Below the pieces are notes generated by a model. The model was not told the origin of the DNA, ran no database searches, and saw only the letters and a list, made by a program, of their open reading frames with translations. From NCBI GenBank assembly GCA_964252035.1, contig OZ176204.1: DNA of 64,000 nt; one strand, 5' to 3'. This DNA is from Podarcis erhardii. Taxonomy: Eukaryota. The translations under genes were made by a program, and so were the position numbers. The number at the start of each line of letters is the position of its first letter. Within the stretch, counting starts at the first letter, position 1. Below, piece after piece: positions 4,746-50,055 of the stretch.

Positions 4746-7700
4746 TCCCTGTACCTAGGCTTGTAATAGGTACGCCGCCTTGAGCTCTTCGGAATATTTC
4801 TAAAAGTTCTGACACTCAGGAATTTGATAAAGACAAATATGCTTCAGTCCTTAACTTATAAGAATTCCCGTTGCTTTCAATGGGACCTCTTGCCAGGGGA
4901 GTAAGCTCAAGCTGGGAGCTTATGTCAGCTATTCAAACACAAATTCCGTAATAAGTTTTTTCTGATTTGTTTGTGCATGTTTGATTTGTTTAAATAGCTG
5001 TCCAAGGCAGCAGGGGCATTCTTCCCTCTTTATTTTGGCATTAATGCAAACAAATCACTAACACTGACAGGAAGCTGAAGCTGTGAGAGACGGCTGAAAT
5101 GATAAGAAATGTTTAAGCCGCTGATTAACGTTTAGACATTAGTTGCTTCAACATTTCTAGCATACTGTCAATATCAAAAATGAACTGCAAAAGAGTGTCA
5201 GCGTGTATCATTGAACATTTGCAATTTTTATCTCAACCTGGTACGGAATTAGATTTAGGGAGGATGTGGGTAGGGGGGAGAGAAAGAAATAAGCTTAGAA
5301 AAATCTGCTTATGCAGGGGTGAAGATGTGGAAAAGGACAAGAATGCCAAGGAGAATCAAGAACATATATCTCTACAAATGATTCATCTTGTATGTGTCAG
5401 AGAGAGCCACGTTATAAAAAATATATTAAGGGAAATGTTAATCTATGCACCTTGCCACAATAAATGTCATTGAACAACAAAGCTGTTCAGGGAAAAGTAA
5501 TTAACATACTACTCTACAATTTTGTTTTGCCAGATAAGGAATGTTGCTCATGGCATCAATTTTATCATAGCCCACCCAGATTTACATTTTGGTTGTTTTA
5601 TGTCTGCCTTCTTAGAAATTAAAGGACTCAAAACAGTCTGGAGAAAAGTAACATCCAGATGAAAGAGTCCCTGATACAACGTGAGAGAAAACATTAACGA
5701 TGGAGATGACACTTTGGAATTTCTCTTCAGGGATAAAAGAAAATGTAACGCTATAAATATTTCTGCATAAAACAAAGATGACATGCCAGACAGTATCAAG
5801 GGTAGGCCCTGTATATCACAGACAGCACCTTTTGGACTGTGTGTGCACCCAAGCAGGATTAATCATACTGGTAGCAATTCAATCACCAACCGATTTCTCT
5901 TCTCTGTCTCCTTCACAGCGCTAGAGTACCAAGGCTTCATCAGAAAGAAAGAAACTCTACACAATTACAACAGACCTTGAAATACCACAAATCCTTTCTT
6001 TCTATTTTTATTTTTCTCTTTATTTCCTTTTGGACACAGGAATTGAAAAAGGGTCAAAGTTTATGGTTTCATGACCCCAAAGAATAAATATCACATATCA
6101 GCTCCACCAGGCAAACAAATTTTACTTCTTTGCACTCCAAGATACATTCATCTTCTATTTTAAGAAAGGGGAAAATAATTAGGTGTGTTGTCAAATTATG
6201 CGTTATATGACAGATCATCTGGTATTTGGTGTTTCACTTAAAAGCAGTCACATGGTCCCCAAACTGGATGGGAATAGTGATTTAGTCCTTGCATGAATTC
6301 CTCCAACTCACTGCTATTTGCTCCACTGAAGGAAACATACTTGCACATTTCCTTCAGTAGGGATAACTGCAGTTTTGGCGGGAAAGGGAGATTGTAACTT
6401 TTCTCCTTATCAACTAGGAAAAATGTGTCAGGGGAAAAGTTTAAAAGCCACAATGAGGCTGCTGCAATCTAATTCAGGGGCCCCTGAATCAAGGCATCCG
6501 ACCACAAGATGCCTCACATAATTTAATTCTCACATGCACGCACTATTTGTGAGTACAAATTAGTCTGGGCTGCACGCCTGTCCAGGCTGCTCACCAAAAT
6601 CCCAGCCATTCCCCTCAGATCAACCCCCCAGAGCTTCCCCTTCCCACCCCAATTTCTGAAGCCACTTCCCTTTTCTATTCTGCAGCCCCATTTTGCATGC
6701 GTTACTCAAACCTCTGTCATTGTTTAAACTCACCACCACCTTTCCTCTGTTTCCATCCATTCCTGCTTTATTCAACCATGTGCTGTTGTTTAAAACTACT
6801 ATTCTCCACCCACCCGCTAACTGCATGCAAATCCAAGATTATGATGCAGCACTACAAATCTTCCAATGCAATGACAGGATTGCATTTTTATGTATACTGG
6901 GGAAAATAGATTCTTTCAAACAAAGGCATTAATTTCAATGCATACTTAGCAACTACATCCAGATTTCCAGCACAAGAATTTTTGCACTGGTTTTTTAACA
7001 TCAGACCACATTGTGCAAGGTCGGGAGGGTTTAACCTTTTCCTTTGCAGCTACAAACTTGGGCAATTTCTCCCCACACAGAAATTAGGAAAGTAATAGTC
7101 TCCCCTCGAGCACCATGGTCCTAACTGGACACATTTGCACCACAACATTCCCCCTCCCCAGATTTTCTAATGTCATATCTAATTGAATCCTCAGATTTCC
7201 AGTTTTGTTTTCCCCACTCTTGCCTTCATTTTGTAGTCTTTTCCCTTCCTATCAAGATCTCATCCTTTAAATCTCTTCCTCAAAACTTATTTCTTTCGCA
7301 AGCCTTTTCTTGGCCCAGTGTATCTTTTCTGTATTGCCTGCTAGTATTATTGCTACTCTCACTACTGCTTTCTTGTTTTGTCCCTTTGTTGGTGTCCTGT
7401 ATGATTTATTTAGTTTAGTTAGGCTGAAGGCACTCCAAAGCATGATCCATATCATAACTCAATTACAAAAGCGGGAAGAAATAAGAGTTATGTAAATATA
7501 ATTATTTTCTTCCTACACATGGTAGATAATAAAGATGCCTATATATGACTACGTGTTGGAGAGCGAATAAGGAACAGAAGCCTTGAAGCACAGATTCCTT
7601 ATGCGTAGATAACATTTTGTGGTAGAGGGTATTCTTTTAATGAATATGATTGCAAACCAGGAACCAAATTCAGTCTTCTGGTATACACGACTCTCATGGT

Positions 7701-43996: not shown

Positions 43997-44001
<5 letters not shown>

Positions 44002-44033
<32 letters not shown>
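44002..44033. repeat. (CA)n microsatellite
   Basis: About 16 CA units. Confidence 0.95.
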
Positions 44034-44035
<2 letters not shown>

Positions 44036-44057
44036 ACTTTATAAATATATAAAACTA

Positions 44058-44283
44058 CAGTGGTACCTAGGGTTACATACGCTTCAGGTTACACACTCCA
44101 CTAACCCAGAAATAATGCTTCAGGTTAAGAACTTTGCTTCAGGATAAGAACAGAAATTGTGCTCCGGCGGCGTGGCAGCAGCAGGAGGCCCCATTAGCTA
44201 AAGTGGTACTTCAGGTTAAGAACAGTTTCAGGTTAAGAACAGACCTCTGGAACGAATTAAGTACTTTACCTGAGGTACCACTG
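44058..44283. mobile_element. Tc1/mariner MITE, family B
   Basis: TA|CAGTGGTACCTAGGGTT ... CTGAGGTACCACTG|GA. Confidence 0.9.
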
Positions 44284-45117
44284 GATGTGTGAAAGACCAT
44301 GGATACCACCTTTAACCAAAAGGTTCCATGTGGTGTCTGTGGCAAAAGGAGGAACATTCTGCAAGCAATGTGTTAAACTGCTAAAATGTGACAACAGCGG
44401 ACCTTTATTGGAAAGCATCTTTTTTCTTATTTAAGTTTGCATCAGTACTTTCAGGAGATGTTCCATTCTATCCTTACTAAATGTCACATACTGGGTCACT
44501 GATATTCTCATTTTAAATATGGGGAGCATGACTTGTTCAAGCACCTCCAGATAATTCATGACTGAGCAAGGTTTCAGGTCGGGTCCAGCCACCACACGAC
44601 ACAGAATGATGGGTTTATTAAAGTAACATTAATGGGCAAAAATCCTCGGATTCAAAGCAGCCAGTATTTGCCAGGCTCTATATTTATGGGGCTCAACAGT
44701 TTAACAGTTTGGGTGGTCTCCTTAAAAAAGCTCATCCCACAGTGCACATCAGTGTAAAAAAAACCCCCAACTCTTAAGAGCACTTCTGTAATAAAAATAA
44801 TTAGGAAAGTCTTGCCTAAGCACTAATATTTATTCAAATGTGTTATCTATTAAGACATATAGGTTTGATGTGCCCCGAAGGTGAACTATGCCTGCTCTAA
44901 GCTACAAGGGTAGCTGATCCAGAAAGTGCACATGTAGCTAAGGAGGCTACCCTATTCATTTCTACCACCAACTGCCCTATGGAAAGGATGCTAATGAATG
45001 GTGAAATCTTAATATTATTCATTGTGATTTTATTATTGTATCTATATGTTACTTGTAAGGATTTGTAACCTGAAATGAGGGATATATAATTTTTTATGTA
45101 GATATATCTATATATGT

Positions 45118-45246
45118 CCCCTTCATGGATCACTGCCTTGCCGTGGCGAAGGGGCTTGAATAACTCGGAGAAGCTATGAGCTATGCCGTGCAGGGCCACC
45201 CAAGATGGACAGGTCATAATGGAGAGTTTTGACCAAAGGTGATCCA
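45118..45246 (+). ncRNA. Candidate HDV-like self-cleaving ribozyme at Bov-B 5' end
   Basis: P1 CCCCTTC (45118-24)/GAAGGGG (45148-54); P2 TGGATCAC (45126-33)/GTGATCCA (45239-46); P3 GCC/GGC with L3 TTGCCGT; P1.1 G45140-C45155; P4 base AACTC/GAGTT; J4/2 C45234-AAA. Confidence 0.72.
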
Positions 45247-48200
45247 CCTGGAGCAGGAACCGGCAATCCACTCCAGTATCCCTGCCAAGAAAACTCCATG
45301 GACAAAGACAACAGGCATATAAAACTTATGACGCTGGAAGATGAGCCTCTCAGGTTGGAAGGTGTCCAACATGCTACTGGGGAAGAGCGGAGGGCAAGTA
45401 CAAGTAGATCCAGAGCTGATGAAGCGGCTGGGCCAAAGCCGAAAGGACGCTCAGTTGCGGATATGCCTGGAAGCGAAAGGAAAGTCCAATGCTGTAAAGA
45501 AAAATATTGCATAGGAACCTGGAATGTAAGAACCATGAACCTTGGTAAGTTGGATGTGGTCAAAAATGAGATGGCAAGAATAAATATTGACATCCTGGGC
45601 ATCAGTGGACTAAAATGGATGGGAATGGGCGAATTCAGTTTGGATGACCATCATATCTACTACTGTGGGCAAGAATCCCGTAAAAGACATGGAGTGGCCC
45701 TCATAGTCAACAAAAGAGTGGCAAAAGCTGTATTGGGATGCAATCTCAAAAATGATAGAATGATCTCGATACGAATCCAAGGCAGACCTTTTAACATCAC
45801 AGTAATCCAAGTTTATGCCCCAACCACTGGTGCTGAAGAAACTGAAATTGGCCAATTCTATGAAGACTTACAACACCTTACAGAATTGACACCAAAGAAG
45901 GATGTTCTTCTCATTATAGGGGATTGGAATGCTAAAGTAGGGAGTCAAGAGATAAAAGGAACAACTGTCAAGTTTGGCCTTGGAGTTCAAAATGAAGCAG
46001 GGCAGAGGCTAATAGAGTTCTGCCAAGAGAACAAGTTGGTCATCACAAACACTCTTTTCCAACAACACAAGAGACGACTCTACACATGGACATCACCAGA
46101 TGGGCAGCATCGAAATCAGATTGATTATATTCTATGCAGCCAAAGATGGAGAAGCTCTATACAGTCAGCAAAAACAAGACCTGGAGCAGACTGTGGCTCA
46201 GATCATCAGCTTCTTATAGCAAAATTCAAGCTTAAACTGAAGAAAGTAGGGAAAACGACTGGGCTGGTAAGATACAATCTAAGTCAAATCCCTTATGAAT
46301 ACACAGTGGAAGTGAGGAACAGGTTTAAGGATTTAGATTTGCTGGACAGAGTGCCTGAAGAACTATGGATGGAGGCTCACAACATTATACAGGAGGCAGC
46401 AACGAAAACCATCCCAATGAAAAGGAAATGCAAGAAAGCAAAGTGGCTGTCCAATGAGGCCTTACAAATAGCGGAGGAGAGAAGGCAAGCAAAATGCGAG
46501 GGAGATAGTGAAAGATAAAAGATACCGGAAATTGAATGCAGATTTCCAAAAAATAGCAAGGAGAGACAAGAAGGCCTTCTTAAACAAGCAATGCAAAGAA
46601 ATAGAGGAAAACAACAGAACGGGAAGAACCAGAGATCTGTTCAAGAAAATTGGAGATATGAAAGGGACATTTCGTACGAAGATTACCATAATAAAGGACA
46701 AAAGTGGTAAGGACCTAACAGAAGCAGAAGACATCAAGAAGAGGTGGCAAGAATACACAGAGGAACTATACCAGAAAGAAATGGATGTCTCGTATACCCC
46801 AGGTAGTGTGGTTGCTGACCTTGAGCCAGACATCCTGGAGAGTGAAGCCAAATGGGCCTTAGAAAGCACTGCAAATAACAAGGCCAGTGGAAGTGATGAT
46901 ATTCCAGCTGAACTACTTAAAATTTTAAAAGATGATGCTGTTAAGGTGCTACACTCAATATGCCAACAAGTTTGGAAAACTCAGTAGTGGCCAGAGGATT
47001 GGAGAAGATCAGTCTACATCCCAATCCCAAAGAAGGGCAGTGCCAAAGAATGCTCCAACTACCGCACAATTGCACTCATTTCACACGCTAGCAAGGTTAT
47101 GCTTAAAATTCTACAAGGAAGGCTCAAGCAGTATATGGACCGAGAACTCCCAGAAGTGCAAGCTGGATTTAGAAGAGGCAGAGGAACCAGAGACCAAATT
47201 GCAAACATGCGTTGGATTATGGAGAAAGCTAGAGAGTTCCAGAAAGACATTTAATTTTGCTTCATTGACTATGCAAAAGCCTTTGATTGTGTCGACCACA
47301 GCAAACTATGGCAAGTTCTTAAAGAAATGGGAGTGCCTGATCACCTCATCTGTCTCCTGAGAAATCTCTATGTGGGACAAGAAGCTTACAGTTAGAACTG
47401 GATATGGAACAACGGATTGGTTCAAAATTGGGAAAGGAGTACGGCAAGGCTGTATATTGTCTCCCTGCTTATTTAACTTATATGCAGAATTCATCATGCG
47501 AAAGGCTGGGCTGGATGAATCCCAAGCCAGAATTAAGATTGCCGGAAGAAATATCAACAACCTCAGATATGCAGATGACACAACCTTGATGGCAGAAAGT
47601 GAGGAGGAATTAAAGAACCTTTTAATGAGGGTGAAAGAGGAGAGCGCAAAATATGGTCTGAAGCTCAACATCAAAAAAACGAAGATCATGGCCACTGGGC
47701 CCATCACCTCCTGGCAAATAGAAGGGGAAGAAATGGAGGCAGTGAGAGATTTTACTTTCTTGGGCTCCATGATCACTGCAGATGGTGACAGCAGTCTCGA
47801 AATTAAAAGACGCCTGCTCCTTGGGAGAAAGGCGATGGCAAACCTAGACAGCATCTTAAAAAGCAGAGACATCACCTTGCCAACAAAGGTCCGTATAGTA
47901 AAAGCCATGGTTTTCCCAGTAGTGATGTATGGAAGTGAGAGCTGGACCATAAAGAAGGCTGATCGCCGAAGAATTGATGCTTTTGAATTATGGTGCTAGA
48001 GGAGACTCTTGAGAGTCCCATAGACTGCAAGATCAAACGCATCTATTCTTTTTTTTTTTAATAAATAATTTTTATTAAAGTTTTCCAATTTAAAACAAAT
48101 TAAATCCAATTTATAATCTTTTTCCAATAACCAGGACTTCCCCTCCCCTCCCCCTCTTGTCTTCCAGTTTAACAAATCAATTCAACAAATTCTTATCCCC

Positions 48201-49990
48201 AAATTACACTTATCGTCAATAACCCAATTTTTCGAAAATTCCCATCCCCTAAGATCGACCTAATTCCCTTCCACGAGTTCCCCCCCTTCAAGAATAATGC
48301 AGATAAAAATAAACAAGATAAAAAATAGTTTTGCACCCTTTGGATTCCAGATTTCCCTCCCCCCTTTCCCGGTTGCGTTCCCAATATCCCTCGACATCTG
48401 ATATCTTCCTGGGGTTCCCACATCTCACTAAACCCAAACCTCTCTAGTCCTTTACCAGTCATTTTTAAATTCGAATGTCCAATCATAGAAGGAGTCTATC
48501 TCAAAAAGGGGCCCATTTCTTCTATCCAGATTTTTATATCCAGGAGCAAAAACTCCAATTTTATTTCTGTAAGCTTGTCAAATCTGAATGTCCCAAATGT
48601 TCCCACTTCCAGTTCTGTCCAGATCTTGTTATTTCATTATTCTTATTAATCACACTCCTCCTTTTTATTTTTTGCTTTTTCCCTGCTCTTCTGCCGAAAT
48701 GTTCTATTTCCAAAAGTTTCTAGTTTCTCTGCAGAGGCTTGTTATTCAGGAGCAAAACATTGCGTCATGTCCCTTTCATTTACATCCATTGTTTTCTGTA
48801 GTGTGTAGACCTCTGTAGACAAAATAATGTTCCATTTCTGCAGTTTCCCAGGAGATAAAAAGTTCTGTTCAACTGTTCAAATTTCCAGTCAAAAACACTT
48901 GCAATATCCCTCAGCTCCTCTAGATGGATTTCAGTAACTGAGTTCCCTTCCAGATCACATCCACCAATCCAAGTAGCTTATTGATCCTTATTTGAAACAT
49001 TTTATATCCAATTTATAACCAATGTAACCGGCAAAGTCCTCATAACAAAGTCTCTGTTTTGTTCTTCCGTTTTGACAGCTCTTTGACAGCTGTCAAAACC
49101 TCCGTTTCTCTTCCCCAGGCATTTTCACCAGTCGCTCCCGGGGTTCCGGGGGGGGGGGTTGCTTTTTAGTTCAAATTCCACTTTTCTCCTCCAGCTCAAT
49201 CTTATATTTTTCCCTCGCGAAGTCACTAATTCATCAAAATAAGGTCACTCTCGATCTTAGTTGTTAAGTCCTTTGTTTTGGCTCTTCTACAATTGGGGGG
49301 GGATGACTTCCTTTTTATACCCCCCCCCCCCCGCTCGCTCCGGATTTTAAAAATTTATCCCTCTTTTTAGTCCATATTCCAATTACTCACGGGTTGTTCT
49401 TTTGGATCCAAATTTTCAATGGAAGAAGCCAGCGCTCTCCACCGAATGGCATGCGGCTTCGCTCGGCAGGGGAAGCGGCGGACTCAAAGCACCACCACCC
49501 CCCAGGCGCCCGCTCCGAAGCCTTTAAAAAGGCTCTTTCGCGGGCCGGGGGGGGGGCTCAAAGGTGCCAGCCGAGTCACCATGTCCATGGGGCTCCGTGC
49601 CCATGGTTTTTGCGGGTCCCCGCGTCGCCGGCGCGGTAGAACCCAGCCCCTGCCGAGCCGGCTCCCTCCGGAGCACGGAGAGAGCCCGCCATTCGGCGAT
49701 GGCGCCAACCCGGAAGTCCCAAACGCATCTATTCTTAAGGAAATTAGCCCTGAGTGCTCACTGGAAGGACAGATCGTGAAGCTGAGGCTCCAATGCTTTG
49801 GCCACCTCATGAGAAGAGAAGACTCCCTGGAAAAGACCCTGATGTTGGGAAAGACTGAGGGCACAAGAAGAAGGGGACGACAGAGGACGAGATGGTTGGA
49901 CAGTGTTCTCGAAGCTACAAACATGAGTCTGACCAAACTGCGGGAGGCAGTGGAAGATAGGCGTGCCTGGCGTGCTCTGGTCCATGGGGT
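45229..49990 (+). pseudogene. Disrupted Bov-B endonuclease/reverse transcriptase ORF
   Basis: EN segment 45229-46518, then frame breaks near 46516, ~47250 and ~47387. Premature TAG at 46985-46987 and 47997-47999. Interrupted at 48050. The C-terminus (LEGQIVKLRLQCFGHLMRR..LEKTLMLGK) resumes at 49737. Confidence 0.93.
48051..49720 (-). mobile_element. Non-autonomous L1-type retroelement (1.67 kb) nested in Bov-B
   Basis: Perfect 16-bp TSD AAACGCATCTATTCTT (48035-48050, 49721-49736). Target TTCTT/AAGG fits the L1 endonuclease consensus. Minus-strand AATAAA (48071-48076) plus A tail. CpG-rich 5' end GGGACTTCCGGGTTGGCGCC. No long ORF of its own. Confidence 0.85.
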
Positions 49991-50055
49991 CACGAAGAGT
50001 CGGACACAACTAAACAACTAAACAACAACATCTATATATGTATATATATAGATGG

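What the first reader, a model, noticed from the sequence alone, without database searches (positions are those of the whole stretch)
45118..45246. HDV-like ribozyme fold beginning exactly at nucleotide 1 of a full-length Bov-B LINE
Seen in the sequence: the first base after the 12-bp TSD opens a perfect 7-bp P1 (CCCCUUC/GAAGGGG). A perfect 8-bp P2 (UGGAUCAC/GUGAUCCA) spans about 105 nt. P3 (GCC/GGC) closes a 7-nt L3 UUGCCGU, compared with CPEB3 UUCACGU. P1.1 is a G-C pair plus U.U, the swapped equivalent of the CPEB3 C-G/U.U pair. An extended P4 follows, then a C-A-A-A J4/2 directly before P2. All elements are in the order of the HDV nested double pseudoknot. Established: HDV-like ribozymes process the 5' ends of R2, RTE and L1Tc/ingi retrotransposons, and L1Tc also starts with a C at +1. 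Inference: Bov-B copies define their 5' end by self-cleavage from read-through host transcripts and so need no own promoter. That could help explain Bov-B's frequent horizontal transfer between squamates and mammals. I do not know whether this has been reported for Bov-B specifically.
Basis: partly seen in the sequence, partly recalled or inferred. Interest (0 to 1): 0.82.

Follow-up and report, generated by a model that had tools for sequence, protein, structure and literature searches.

The report
HDV-like ribozyme at Bov-B 5' end
The first 129 bases of this lizard Bov-B jumping gene fold like the self-cutting RNA of hepatitis delta virus, and relatives keep that fold through matching mutations, so the element most likely cuts itself out of longer transcripts exactly at its first base; cattle-type Bov-B has lost this core.

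Summary
Window 45118-45246 can be drawn as an HDV-type nested double pseudoknot that starts on the first base after a 12-bp TSD. A strict all-Watson-Crick descriptor hits only this site in the 64-kb window; shuffles give 0.13 hits.

The fold is real. In 13 homologous 5' ends from Podarcis-like, Zootoca, Pogona, Candoia, Varanus and five metagenome/contaminant RTE lineages, 91% of cells pair. 26 of 43 pairs carry compensatory changes, including 4 of 7 in P1 and 7 of 8 in P2. No shuffle out of 500 reaches this. A J4/2 motif C-N-A-A is kept, which places the conserved C at 45233 rather than 45234.

TSDs in six independent insertions put the element's first base on P1 nucleotide 1. Shorter HDV-like ribozymes sit at the same place in two further lineages.

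Self-cleavage itself is untested. RNA-seq showed no pile-up of 5' ends and did show junction-spanning reads, so it is uninformative.

The idea that the ribozyme eased transfer to mammals is not supported. All 16 complete mammalian-type hits of the model (cattle-type and relatives) lack P3, L3 and the P1 3' strand, and cattle-type copies carry a repeat-rich 5' leader instead.

HDV-like ribozymes are already known in RTE elements, so this is a new member of a known kind. Another first-reader note (s1-263154) reports the same idea on another piece of this genome.

The parts
45106..45117 (+). left target-site duplication ATCTATATATGT
   Evidence: exact 12-mer repeated at 50030-50041
45118..45124 (+). 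P1 5' strand CCCCUUC; the predicted cleavage site is 5' of C45118, the first base of the element
   Evidence: 7 Watson-Crick pairs with 45148-45154; 4 of 7 pairs have compensatory changes in A5
45126..45133 (+). P2 5' strand UGGAUCAC
   Evidence: pairs with 45239-45246; 7 of 8 pairs have compensatory changes
45135..45137 (+). P3 5' strand GCC
   Evidence: pairs with 45145-45147; GCC/GGC alternates with ACC/GGU in relatives
45138..45144 (+). L3 UUGCCGU; G45140 is the P1.1 partner of C45155
   Evidence: The Rfam RF02682 consensus aligns its L3 UCUaCGU here. The G-C of P1.1 is kept in 12 of 13 sequences.
45145..45147 (+). P3 3' strand GGC
45148..45154 (+). P1 3' strand GAAGGGG
45155..45156 (+). 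J1/4, the 3' side of P1.1 (C pairs G45140; U faces U45139)
   Evidence: helix 4. Two Watson-Crick pairs stand here in L001, L021 and L069.
45157..45232 (+). Long P4 domain. Helices: 45160/45229, 45162-45166/45224-45228, 45173-45179/45214-45220, 45181-45182/45211-45212, 45184/45209, 45186-45189/45205-45208, 45193-45195/45199-45201.
   Evidence: RNAalifold; 14 of 23 P4 pairs have compensatory changes
45233..45238 (+). J4/2 CCAAAG; C45233 is the conserved (candidate catalytic) cytosine of a C-N-A-A motif
   Evidence: In A5, column 137 is C in 11 of 13 sequences. L001 has its C one column on, and L090 has U.
45239..45246 (+). P2 3' strand GUGAUCCA
45248..45276 (+). second conserved hairpin just downstream: 6-bp stem CUGGAG/CUCCAG with a nearly invariant 17-nt loop
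   Evidence: 99% of cells paired and 4 of 6 pairs compensatory in 16 sequences
45298..47999 (+). Bov-B ORF (endonuclease and reverse transcriptase), broken into four frames
   Evidence: ORF list and Pfam PF03372, PF14529, PF00078; 95% identity to Podarcis muralis proteins
48051..49736 (.). nested insertion of another repeat with a 17-bp TSD (CAAACGCATCTATTCTT)
   Evidence: the element is colinear with a 3226-nt Bov-B once this is removed
49737..50029 (+). Bov-B 3' end
50030..50041 (+). right target-site duplication

Best explanation
Window 45118-45246 is the 5'-terminal HDV-like self-cleaving ribozyme of a squamate Bov-B (RTE-clade) LINE.

Proposed mechanism, by analogy with tested relatives. 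When the element is transcribed as part of a longer RNA, or from a start upstream of it, the first 129 nt fold into the nested double pseudoknot P1/P1.1/P2/P3/P4. The J4/2 cytosine (C45233) and a bound Mg2+ then catalyse cleavage of the phosphodiester 5' of C45118. This leaves an element RNA that begins exactly at nucleotide 1 and still carries the whole ribozyme, so every full-length retrotransposed copy inherits it.

Shown here: the fold, its conservation by covariation, and the coincidence of P1 nucleotide 1 with the TSD-defined 5' ends.

Inferred: catalysis, co-transcription with host genes, and any role in translation.

This particular copy has an intact ribozyme but a broken ORF.
For: 1. 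All helices are perfect, and this is the only strict-descriptor hit in the window, against 0.13 expected.
2. In 13 homologous 5' ends, 91.3% of cells pair, against 76.5% in shuffles and 37-45% in slid controls. 26 of 43 pairs have changes on both sides (shuffles 17.3; 0 of 500 reach it). The covariation score is 0.525, against 0.237 shuffled and 0.07-0.12 slid. Both pseudoknot helices covary: P1 in 4 of 7 pairs and P2 in 7 of 8.
3. In my hand parse, P1 takes at least six different sequences and stays 7 bp in all but L069 (6 bp). The 5' strand starts with C in all but two sequences (L096b starts with U, L069 with A).
4. The J4/2 motif C-N-A-A is kept in 14 of 15 parsed sequences. The L3 pattern U-N-N-N-C-G-U matches the Rfam HDV consensus.
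5. TSDs of 10-13 bp put the 5' end on P1 nucleotide 1 in W, L098 (Zootoca), L097a and L097b (Candoia), L003 (Varanus) and L093.
6. Minimal HDV-like ribozymes sit at the same place in other RTE lineages. Rfam RF02682 gives sub-threshold hits there: L021 32.3 bits, L069 30.8 bits, L018 26.3 bits. RF02682 also aligns its P1/P3/L3 core starting exactly at 45118.
7. Precedent: HDV-like ribozymes process RTE, Baggins, R2 and L1Tc 5' ends (PMC6765202 citing Ruminski 2011; PMC3185411).
Against: - No cleavage assay was done.
- No Rfam family reaches its gathering score (15.1 bits against 44).
- The first P1 pair is C-G, not the G.U wobble of HDV and CPEB3. This comparison is from memory.
- P1.1 is one G-C pair plus U.U in the Bov-B lineage.
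- The nested-only MFE fold is not unusually stable (z = -1.0) and prefers an alternative pairing of the P3/L3 region.
- In two RNA-seq runs there is no pile-up of read starts at 45118. 54 and 73 reads run from another copy's flank across the junction. Their strand cannot be assigned with certainty.
- Several relatives showed no detectable HDV-like fold (L005/L006, L019, L028).
- Mammalian-type Bov-B (cattle-type and relatives) lacks the core.
Confidence: 0.8

Rival explanations
1. The conserved structure is a non-catalytic 5'-UTR element that only has HDV-like topology. It could be a binding site for the element's own protein, an IRES-like translation element or an RNA stabiliser. The 5' end would then be set by an internal promoter starting at +1.
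For: Covariation proves a structure, not catalysis. The first P1 pair is C-G and P1.1 is weak. RNA-seq shows junction-spanning reads and no 5'-end pile-up. Mammalian-type copies keep P2 and P4 without the core, so those helices have value on their own. HDV-like ribozymes of retrotransposons are also proposed to promote translation (PMC6765202).
Against: A non-catalytic element has no evident need for the full HDV active-site layout: a 3-bp P3, a 7-8-nt L3 ending CGU, C-N-A-A in J4/2, and P1 beginning at the terminal nucleotide. That layout is kept across lineages with only about 40% protein identity. Related RTE ribozymes were shown to cleave, according to PMC6765202 and PMC4908430 (drz-Agam-2-1, which I recall from memory maps to an RTE element; PMC4908430 does not say so).
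Confidence: 0.12
2. Dual function as in L1Tc. The same first ~130 bp act as an internal promoter at the DNA level and as a ribozyme at the RNA level, so the element does not depend on host read-through.
For: L1Tc's first 77 nt are both promoter and ribozyme, with the cleavage site and the transcription start at the same +1 (PMC3185411). Nothing here excludes promoter activity.
Against: No promoter test was possible. RTE and Baggins elements with HDV-like ribozymes are described as lacking their own promoters (PMC6765202). This is an addition to the best explanation rather than a true alternative.
Confidence: 0.25
3. Chance complementarity in a GC-balanced 5' UTR, with no selected structure.
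For: A loose HDV descriptor gives 142 hit positions on the + strand of the 64-kb window. The MFE z-score is only -1.0.
Against: The strict descriptor is expected 0.13 times per 128 kb and hits only here. Compensatory changes occur in 26 of 43 pairs. The same fold is found with different helix sequences in distant lineages.
Confidence: 0.01

Closest known systems
HDV-like ribozymes at the 5' ends of RTE and Baggins non-LTR retrotransposons (Ruminski et al. [quoted passage not shown]
   Same: Same retrotransposon clade (RTE), same position (the first nucleotides of the element), same nested double-pseudoknot topology, and the same proposed role of liberating the element RNA from a co-transcript.
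   Different: These are vertebrate (squamate) Bov-B hosts. P4 is a long branched domain of about 76 nt and J1/2 is 1 nt. The P1 5' strand is pyrimidine-rich and starts with C. No Rfam drz-Agam model matches. I could not read Ruminski 2011, so I cannot exclude that vertebrate RTE or Bov-B examples are listed there.
L1Tc/ingi HDV-like ribozyme (L1TcRz, PMC3185411)
   Same: An HDV-like ribozyme occupies the first nucleotides of a TSD-flanked, APE-type LINE, with cleavage at +1 of the element.
   Different: L1Tc's ribozyme is 77 nt and doubles as the promoter Pr77. It belongs to a different LINE clade in trypanosomatids. Promoter activity is untested here.
R2 element 5' ribozyme (PMC3774820)
   Same: An HDV-like fold defines the 5' end by self-cleavage from a co-transcript. 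Internally deleted derivatives keep the ribozyme (PMC3414825). A comparable short form, nt 1-201 joined to the 3' tail, is hinted at by reads here.
   Different: R2 is site-specific in 28S rDNA and P1 can involve 28S sequence. Bov-B inserts anywhere, and the whole ribozyme lies inside the element.
HDV, CPEB3 and F. prausnitzii HDV ribozymes (Rfam RF00094, RF00622, RF02682)
   Same: Helix order; 7-bp P1; 3-bp P3; 7-nt L3 ending CGU; C-N-A-A in J4/2. RF02682 aligns its core to 45118-45154.
   Different: The score is far below the gathering threshold (15.1 against 44 bits). The first pair is C-G instead of G.U (from memory). There are 5 nt rather than 3 between the C and P2. P4 is much longer.
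Twister-variant ribozymes at the 5' end of the RTE element Perere-3 (PMC8501958; PMC7761336)
   Same: RTE-clade LINEs that use a 5' self-cleaving ribozyme.
   Different: A different ribozyme class. This shows that the 5' ribozyme module is exchangeable within RTE, as is the loss seen in mammalian-type Bov-B.

Membership tests
HDV-like self-cleaving ribozymes | Nested double pseudoknot with strands in the order P1-P2-P3-L3-P3'-P1'-J1/4-P4-J4/2-P2' | tested here: met
   Both crossing helices are supported by covariation.
HDV-like self-cleaving ribozymes | Cleavage site at the first nucleotide of P1 (PMC4908430) | tested here: inconclusive
   P1 nucleotide 1 is the TSD-defined first base of the element in 6 of 6 insertions with a TSD. 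This is what cleavage there would produce. Cleavage itself was not observed, and RNA-seq shows no 5'-end pile-up.
HDV-like self-cleaving ribozymes | Conserved catalytic cytosine in J4/2 followed by purines (C-N-A-A) | tested here: met
   C-N-A-A is present in 14 of 15 parsed sequences. In the window it is C45233-C-A-A.
HDV-like self-cleaving ribozymes | 3-bp P3 closing a 7-8-nt L3 of HDV-type sequence | tested here: met
   GCC/GGC or ACC/GGU with L3 UUGYCGU. The RF02682 consensus aCC-UCUaCGU-GGu aligns to it.
HDV-like self-cleaving ribozymes | P1.1 mini-helix between L3 and J1/4 (usually 2 bp) | tested here: inconclusive
   The G-C pair is kept in 12 of 13 sequences, but the second position is U.U in the Bov-B lineage. 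Two Watson-Crick pairs stand there in L001, L021 and L069.
HDV-like self-cleaving ribozymes | G.U wobble as the first P1 pair (HDV, CPEB3; from memory) | tested here: not met
HDV-like self-cleaving ribozymes | Score above the gathering threshold of an Rfam HDV-family model | tested here: not met
   RF02682 gives 15.1 bits in the window and 26-32 bits in relatives, against a threshold of 44. Covariance models cannot score the pseudoknot or the long P4.
HDV-like self-cleaving ribozymes | Mg2+-dependent self-scission leaving a 5'-OH | not testable with these tools
   Needs in vitro transcription and cleavage assays.
Bov-B / RTE-clade LINE | Single ORF with an APE-type endonuclease and a reverse transcriptase, about 3.2 kb, TSDs, and a Bov-B-type 3' end | tested here: met
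   Pfam PF03372, PF14529 and PF00078. 3226 nt colinear with the Zootoca, Pogona and Candoia copies. 12-bp TSD. 72-81% identity to ruminant craniofacial-development-protein-2-like/Bov-B endonuclease proteins.

The most novel reading that the evidence does not exclude
Bov-B changed its way of making a 5' end during or after its spread into mammals. Squamate and invertebrate-type RTE/Bov-B elements rely on a terminal HDV-like ribozyme and so need no promoter. The mammalian-type lineage deleted the 21-nt catalytic core (P3, L3 and the P1 3' strand) and, at least in the cattle-type copies, acquired a tandem-repeat 5' leader that acts as its own promoter. P2, P4 and the downstream hairpin were kept for another role, such as translation or protein binding. 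The ribozyme would then be a lineage marker for the direction and timing of Bov-B horizontal transfers.
Probability: 0.3. Interest if true: 0.7.

Novelty: new member of a known kind. Interest (0 to 1): 0.55.

Why it matters
Bov-B is the textbook case of horizontal transposon transfer among vertebrates, yet how its transcripts get their exact 5' end has not been explained in any paper I could search.

A terminal self-cleaving ribozyme would explain three things. Full-length copies begin at one precise base. The element can be expressed from any host transcript. Short internally deleted derivatives that keep the first ~200 nt can still be mobilised.

The loss of the catalytic core in cattle-type Bov-B, with retention of P2, P4 and a second conserved hairpin, gives a testable contrast between two ways of expressing the same element. 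It also gives a structural character for tracing transfers.

The class of mechanism is already established for RTE elements, so this extends known biology and does not overturn it.

Tried and rejected
- Rfam with evalue thresholds over 44000-50000 and over 45100-45270 gave no family near its gathering score.
- A plain MFE fold is not unusual (z = -1.0) and cannot show the pseudoknot.
- My first, loose descriptor is useless as evidence, with 142 hit positions (many overlapping) on the + strand of the 64-kb window. I replaced it with a strict one.
- A viral-contig scan found no relatives.
- RNA-seq. The unique flank 44600-45068 has zero depth. There is no pile-up of starts at 45118. 54 and 73 reads cross the junction into another copy's flank. 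The 5' 350 nt are dominated by the mate orientation opposite to that of the ORF region, so these reads may be antisense. I treat the data as uninformative, not as support.
- I considered a hammerhead, or an alternative CUGCGU/ACGCAG helix, in L002/L018/L021. I rejected this: the hammerhead cleavage-site rule fails, and RF02682 and a manual parse give an HDV fold instead.
- A descriptor hit at -466 in the ruminant locus L012 is absent from the other ruminant copies and is taken as chance. Rfam finds no ribozyme in eight ruminant-type loci.
- The ATG at 45177 inside P4 starts the annotated ORF in one Anolis protein. It is not conserved in L001, L079 or L077 and is out of frame here, so the P4 conservation is not explained by coding.
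- No HDV-like fold was found upstream of the ORF in L005/L006 (Adineta), L019 or L028. L004 (Anolis) is 5'-truncated. L080 has P2, P3, L3 (UUCACGU) and C-G-A-A but an imperfect P1 (by eye). L049 is only tentative.
- Ruminski 2011 (PMC3308841) and the RNA Biol 2011 paper PMC3256348 are not held, so I could not check their lists of elements. Full-text searches for Bov-B, BovB or RTE-BovB together with ribozyme found no report.

Full report
**What is there**

- A 12-bp TSD, ATCTATATATGT, lies at 45106-45117 and again at 50030-50041.
- It brackets a Bov-B/RTE LINE at 45118-50029.
- A nested repeat at 48051-49736 has its own 17-bp TSD. With it removed, the element is 3226 nt and colinear end to end with copies from Zootoca, Pogona, Candoia and Varanus.
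- The ORF has endonuclease and reverse-transcriptase domains (Pfam PF03372, PF14529, PF00078) but is split into four frames. The copy is full-length and dead.
- The best protein matches are Podarcis muralis at 95% identity, so the host is probably a lacertid lizard. Ruminant Bov-B-derived proteins match at 72-81%.

**The fold in this copy**

| Element | Window coordinates | Sequence |
|---|---|---|
| P1 | 45118-45124 / 45148-45154 | CCCCUUC / GAAGGGG |
| P2 | 45126-45133 / 45239-45246 | UGGAUCAC / GUGAUCCA |
| P3 | 45135-45137 / 45145-45147 | GCC / GGC |
| L3 | 45138-45144 | UUGCCGU |
| J4/2 | 45233-45238 | CCAAAG |

These elements stand in the order of the HDV nested double pseudoknot. Topology alone is weak evidence:
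- A loose descriptor gave 142 hit positions (many overlapping) on the + strand of the window.
- The nested MFE fold is ordinary, with z = -1.0.
- No Rfam family comes near its threshold.

A strict all-Watson-Crick descriptor hits only this site on either strand. Thirty dinucleotide shuffles gave 0.13 hits per 128 kb. The hit starts on the TSD-defined first base. When given only this stretch, Rfam's RF02682 (F. prausnitzii HDV ribozyme) aligns its P1/P3/L3 core to 45118-45154, starting exactly at 45118. The score is only 15.1 bits, because the model cannot span the long P4.

**Comparative evidence**

I collected relatives in three ways.
- By protein, from encoding contigs.
- By a protein-profile scan of metagenome contigs, which gave 80 loci at 36-81% identity.
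- From contaminant contigs in bacterial genome assemblies.

A covariance model was built on five 5' ends with P2, P3 and P4 as its structure. It found full-length matches in these loci:

| Source | Locus |
|---|---|
| Zootoca | L098 |
| Pogona, two copies | L096 |
| Candoia, two copies | L097 |
| Varanus | L003 |
| Metagenome or contaminant lineages, about 40-66% protein identity | L001, L077, L079, L058, L093/L090 |

On a MAFFT alignment of these 13 sequences (A5), the full pseudoknotted structure gives the following:
- 91.3% of cells are paired, against 76.5% in shuffles and 37-45% when the partners are slid.
- 26 of 43 pairs have changes on both sides. Shuffles give 17.3, and 0 of 500 reach the observed value.
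- The covariation score is 0.525, against 0.237 shuffled and 0.07-0.12 slid.
- Compensatory pairs per helix: 4 of 7 in P1, 7 of 8 in P2, 1 of 3 in P3 and 14 of 23 in P4.

P1 was not part of the search model's structure, so its support does not come from model fitting. The sequences are related, so cell counts overstate the number of independent events.

By lineage:
- P1 takes at least six different forms: CCCCUUC, CUUCAGC, CCCUCCC, CUCCUCC, CUUCCUC and CUCUCAU, each with its matching 3' strand.
- P2 takes at least seven forms.
- L093 and L090 are one column out of register in A5 for P1. The official P1 count is therefore conservative.

**Active-site features**

J4/2 reads C-N-A-A in 14 of 15 parsed sequences. 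The exception, L090, has U and also has a broken P3, so it looks like a decayed copy.
- The conserved C corresponds to window C45233, five nucleotides before P2'.
- L3 follows U-N-N-N-C-G-U, like the Rfam HDV consensus.
- P1.1 is a conserved G-C pair (12 of 13 sequences) plus U.U in the Bov-B lineage. It is two Watson-Crick pairs in L001, L021 and L069.
- The first P1 pair is C-G, or U.G in some copies, not the G.U of HDV and CPEB3. That comparison is from memory.

**Other lineages**

- The lineage of L002, L018 and L021 has about 57% protein identity to the window's Bov-B. It carries a minimal HDV-like ribozyme about 190 nt upstream of the ATG: P1 CUCUCAU/AUGAGAG, P2 ACGUGC/GCGCGU, P3 ACC/GGU, a short P4, and C-U-A-A. 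Rfam RF02682 finds it at 32.3 and 26.3 bits.
- L069 is found at 30.8 bits, exactly where my descriptor had placed it.

The 5' HDV-like module is therefore widespread in this part of the RTE clade.

**The 5' end**

Upstream of P1 nucleotide 1, independent copies share no sequence. TSDs confirm the boundary:

| Copy | TSD length |
|---|---|
| W (this window) | 12 bp |
| L098 Zootoca | 12 bp |
| L097a Candoia | 11 bp |
| L097b Candoia | 10 bp; the element starts one C further upstream, which completes a 7-bp P1 |
| L003 Varanus | 11 bp |
| L093 | 13 bp |

This is what cleavage 5' of P1 would produce. It is also what a transcription start at +1 would produce.

**Mammalian-type Bov-B**

- All 16 complete mammalian-type hits of the model (cattle-type loci and relatives with more diverged proteins) align to the lizard element only from window 45155 onward.
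- They keep P4 and a covarying P2 (GGACCAC/GUGGUCC; L051 has UGGACCAU/AUGGUCCA).
- They have a deletion of about 21 nt that removes P3, L3 and the P1 3' strand.
- Upstream, the cattle-type copies carry at least 300 nt of GC-rich, repeated leader.
- Rfam finds no ribozyme in eight of these loci.

If anything, that lineage switched strategy.

**RNA data**

Two bulk RNA-seq runs of the same species label were laid on 44600-46600.
- The unique flank has zero depth, and the element is covered.
- No position qualifies as a place where many molecules begin.
- At 45118, 54 and 73 reads continue upstream into one other copy's flank. Co-transcripts across a Bov-B 5' junction therefore exist.
- The first ~350 nt are dominated by the mate orientation opposite to that of the ORF region, so these reads may be antisense. 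I could not resolve this and count the data as neutral.
- Reads that leave the element at 45318 continue into sequence resembling the Bov-B 3' tail. This suggests a short internally deleted derivative that keeps the ribozyme.

**Literature**

- HDV-like ribozymes are established at the 5' ends of R2, L1Tc, Baggins and RTE elements. The RTE and Baggins elements are described as promoter-less (PMC6765202, citing Ruminski 2011; PMC3185411; PMC3774820).
- Some RTE elements use twister variants instead (PMC8501958, PMC7761336).
- Full-text searches for Bov-B, BovB or RTE-BovB together with ribozyme found no report.
- Ruminski 2011 itself is not held, so prior mention cannot be excluded.
- Another first-reader note (s1-263154) makes the same proposal for a different copy in this genome. 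It is not independent evidence.

**Verdict**

A conserved HDV-type double pseudoknot at nucleotide 1 of squamate Bov-B is demonstrated by covariation. That it self-cleaves is a strong inference (about 0.8) from three things: the active-site layout, the position, and tested relatives. It is a new member of a known kind. The secondary finding is that mammalian-type Bov-B has lost the core.

Noticed in passing
window 45248-45276; also L001-L005, L008, L018-L028, L050, L080: Directly after the ribozyme lies a hairpin with a 6-bp covarying stem. 99% of cells pair and 4 of 6 pairs are compensatory. Its 17-nt loop is nearly invariant (AAGGNAAUGGCAAMCCA). It is kept even in mammalian-type Bov-B and, from memory, in Bov-A2/Bov-tA SINEs. 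It is probably a protein-binding or translation element.
   Followed up: yes
L007-L016, L022, L032, L038, L040, L048, L051, L091 (mammalian-type Bov-B: cattle-type and relatives): These copies have lost P3, L3 and the P1 3' strand through a deletion of about 21 nt, but they keep covarying P2 and P4. The cattle-type copies carry at least 300 nt of GC-rich tandem-repeat 5' leader.
   Followed up: partly
window 45318 (reads of X23 and X3): Reads and a contig leave the element at 45318 and continue into sequence like the Bov-B 3' tail. This suggests an expressed, internally deleted short derivative of about 280 nt that keeps the ribozyme. It would be analogous to R2 SIDEs and to ruminant Bov-A.
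   Followed up: no
window 48051-49736: A nested insertion with a 17-bp TSD sits inside the Bov-B. It starts with a T-run, so it may be a reverse-oriented poly(A) retroelement, and it is C-rich. It was not identified.
   Followed up: no
L021 136-213, L018 643-720, L002 about 4820-4900, L069 144-217, L080 about 240-345: Minimal HDV-like ribozymes with a short P4 lie upstream of other RTE lineages. In L018 and L021 they are followed by a second covarying hairpin (CUAYCG...CGRUAG). L080 has L3 UUCACGU but an imperfect P1.
   Followed up: partly
L090, L093, L094 (Metamycoplasmataceae MAG); L088, L089, L091, L092, L095 (bacterial assemblies): Bov-B/RTE LINEs sit in bacterial genome records. They are almost certainly eukaryotic host contamination of those assemblies.
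   Followed up: no
window 45177-45231: An ATG inside P4 opens a short frame (MSYAVQGHPRW...). In one annotated Anolis protein (P0012) it is in frame with the main ORF. Here it is out of frame, and it is not conserved in distant lineages.
   Followed up: partly
I did not examine it.
   Followed up: no
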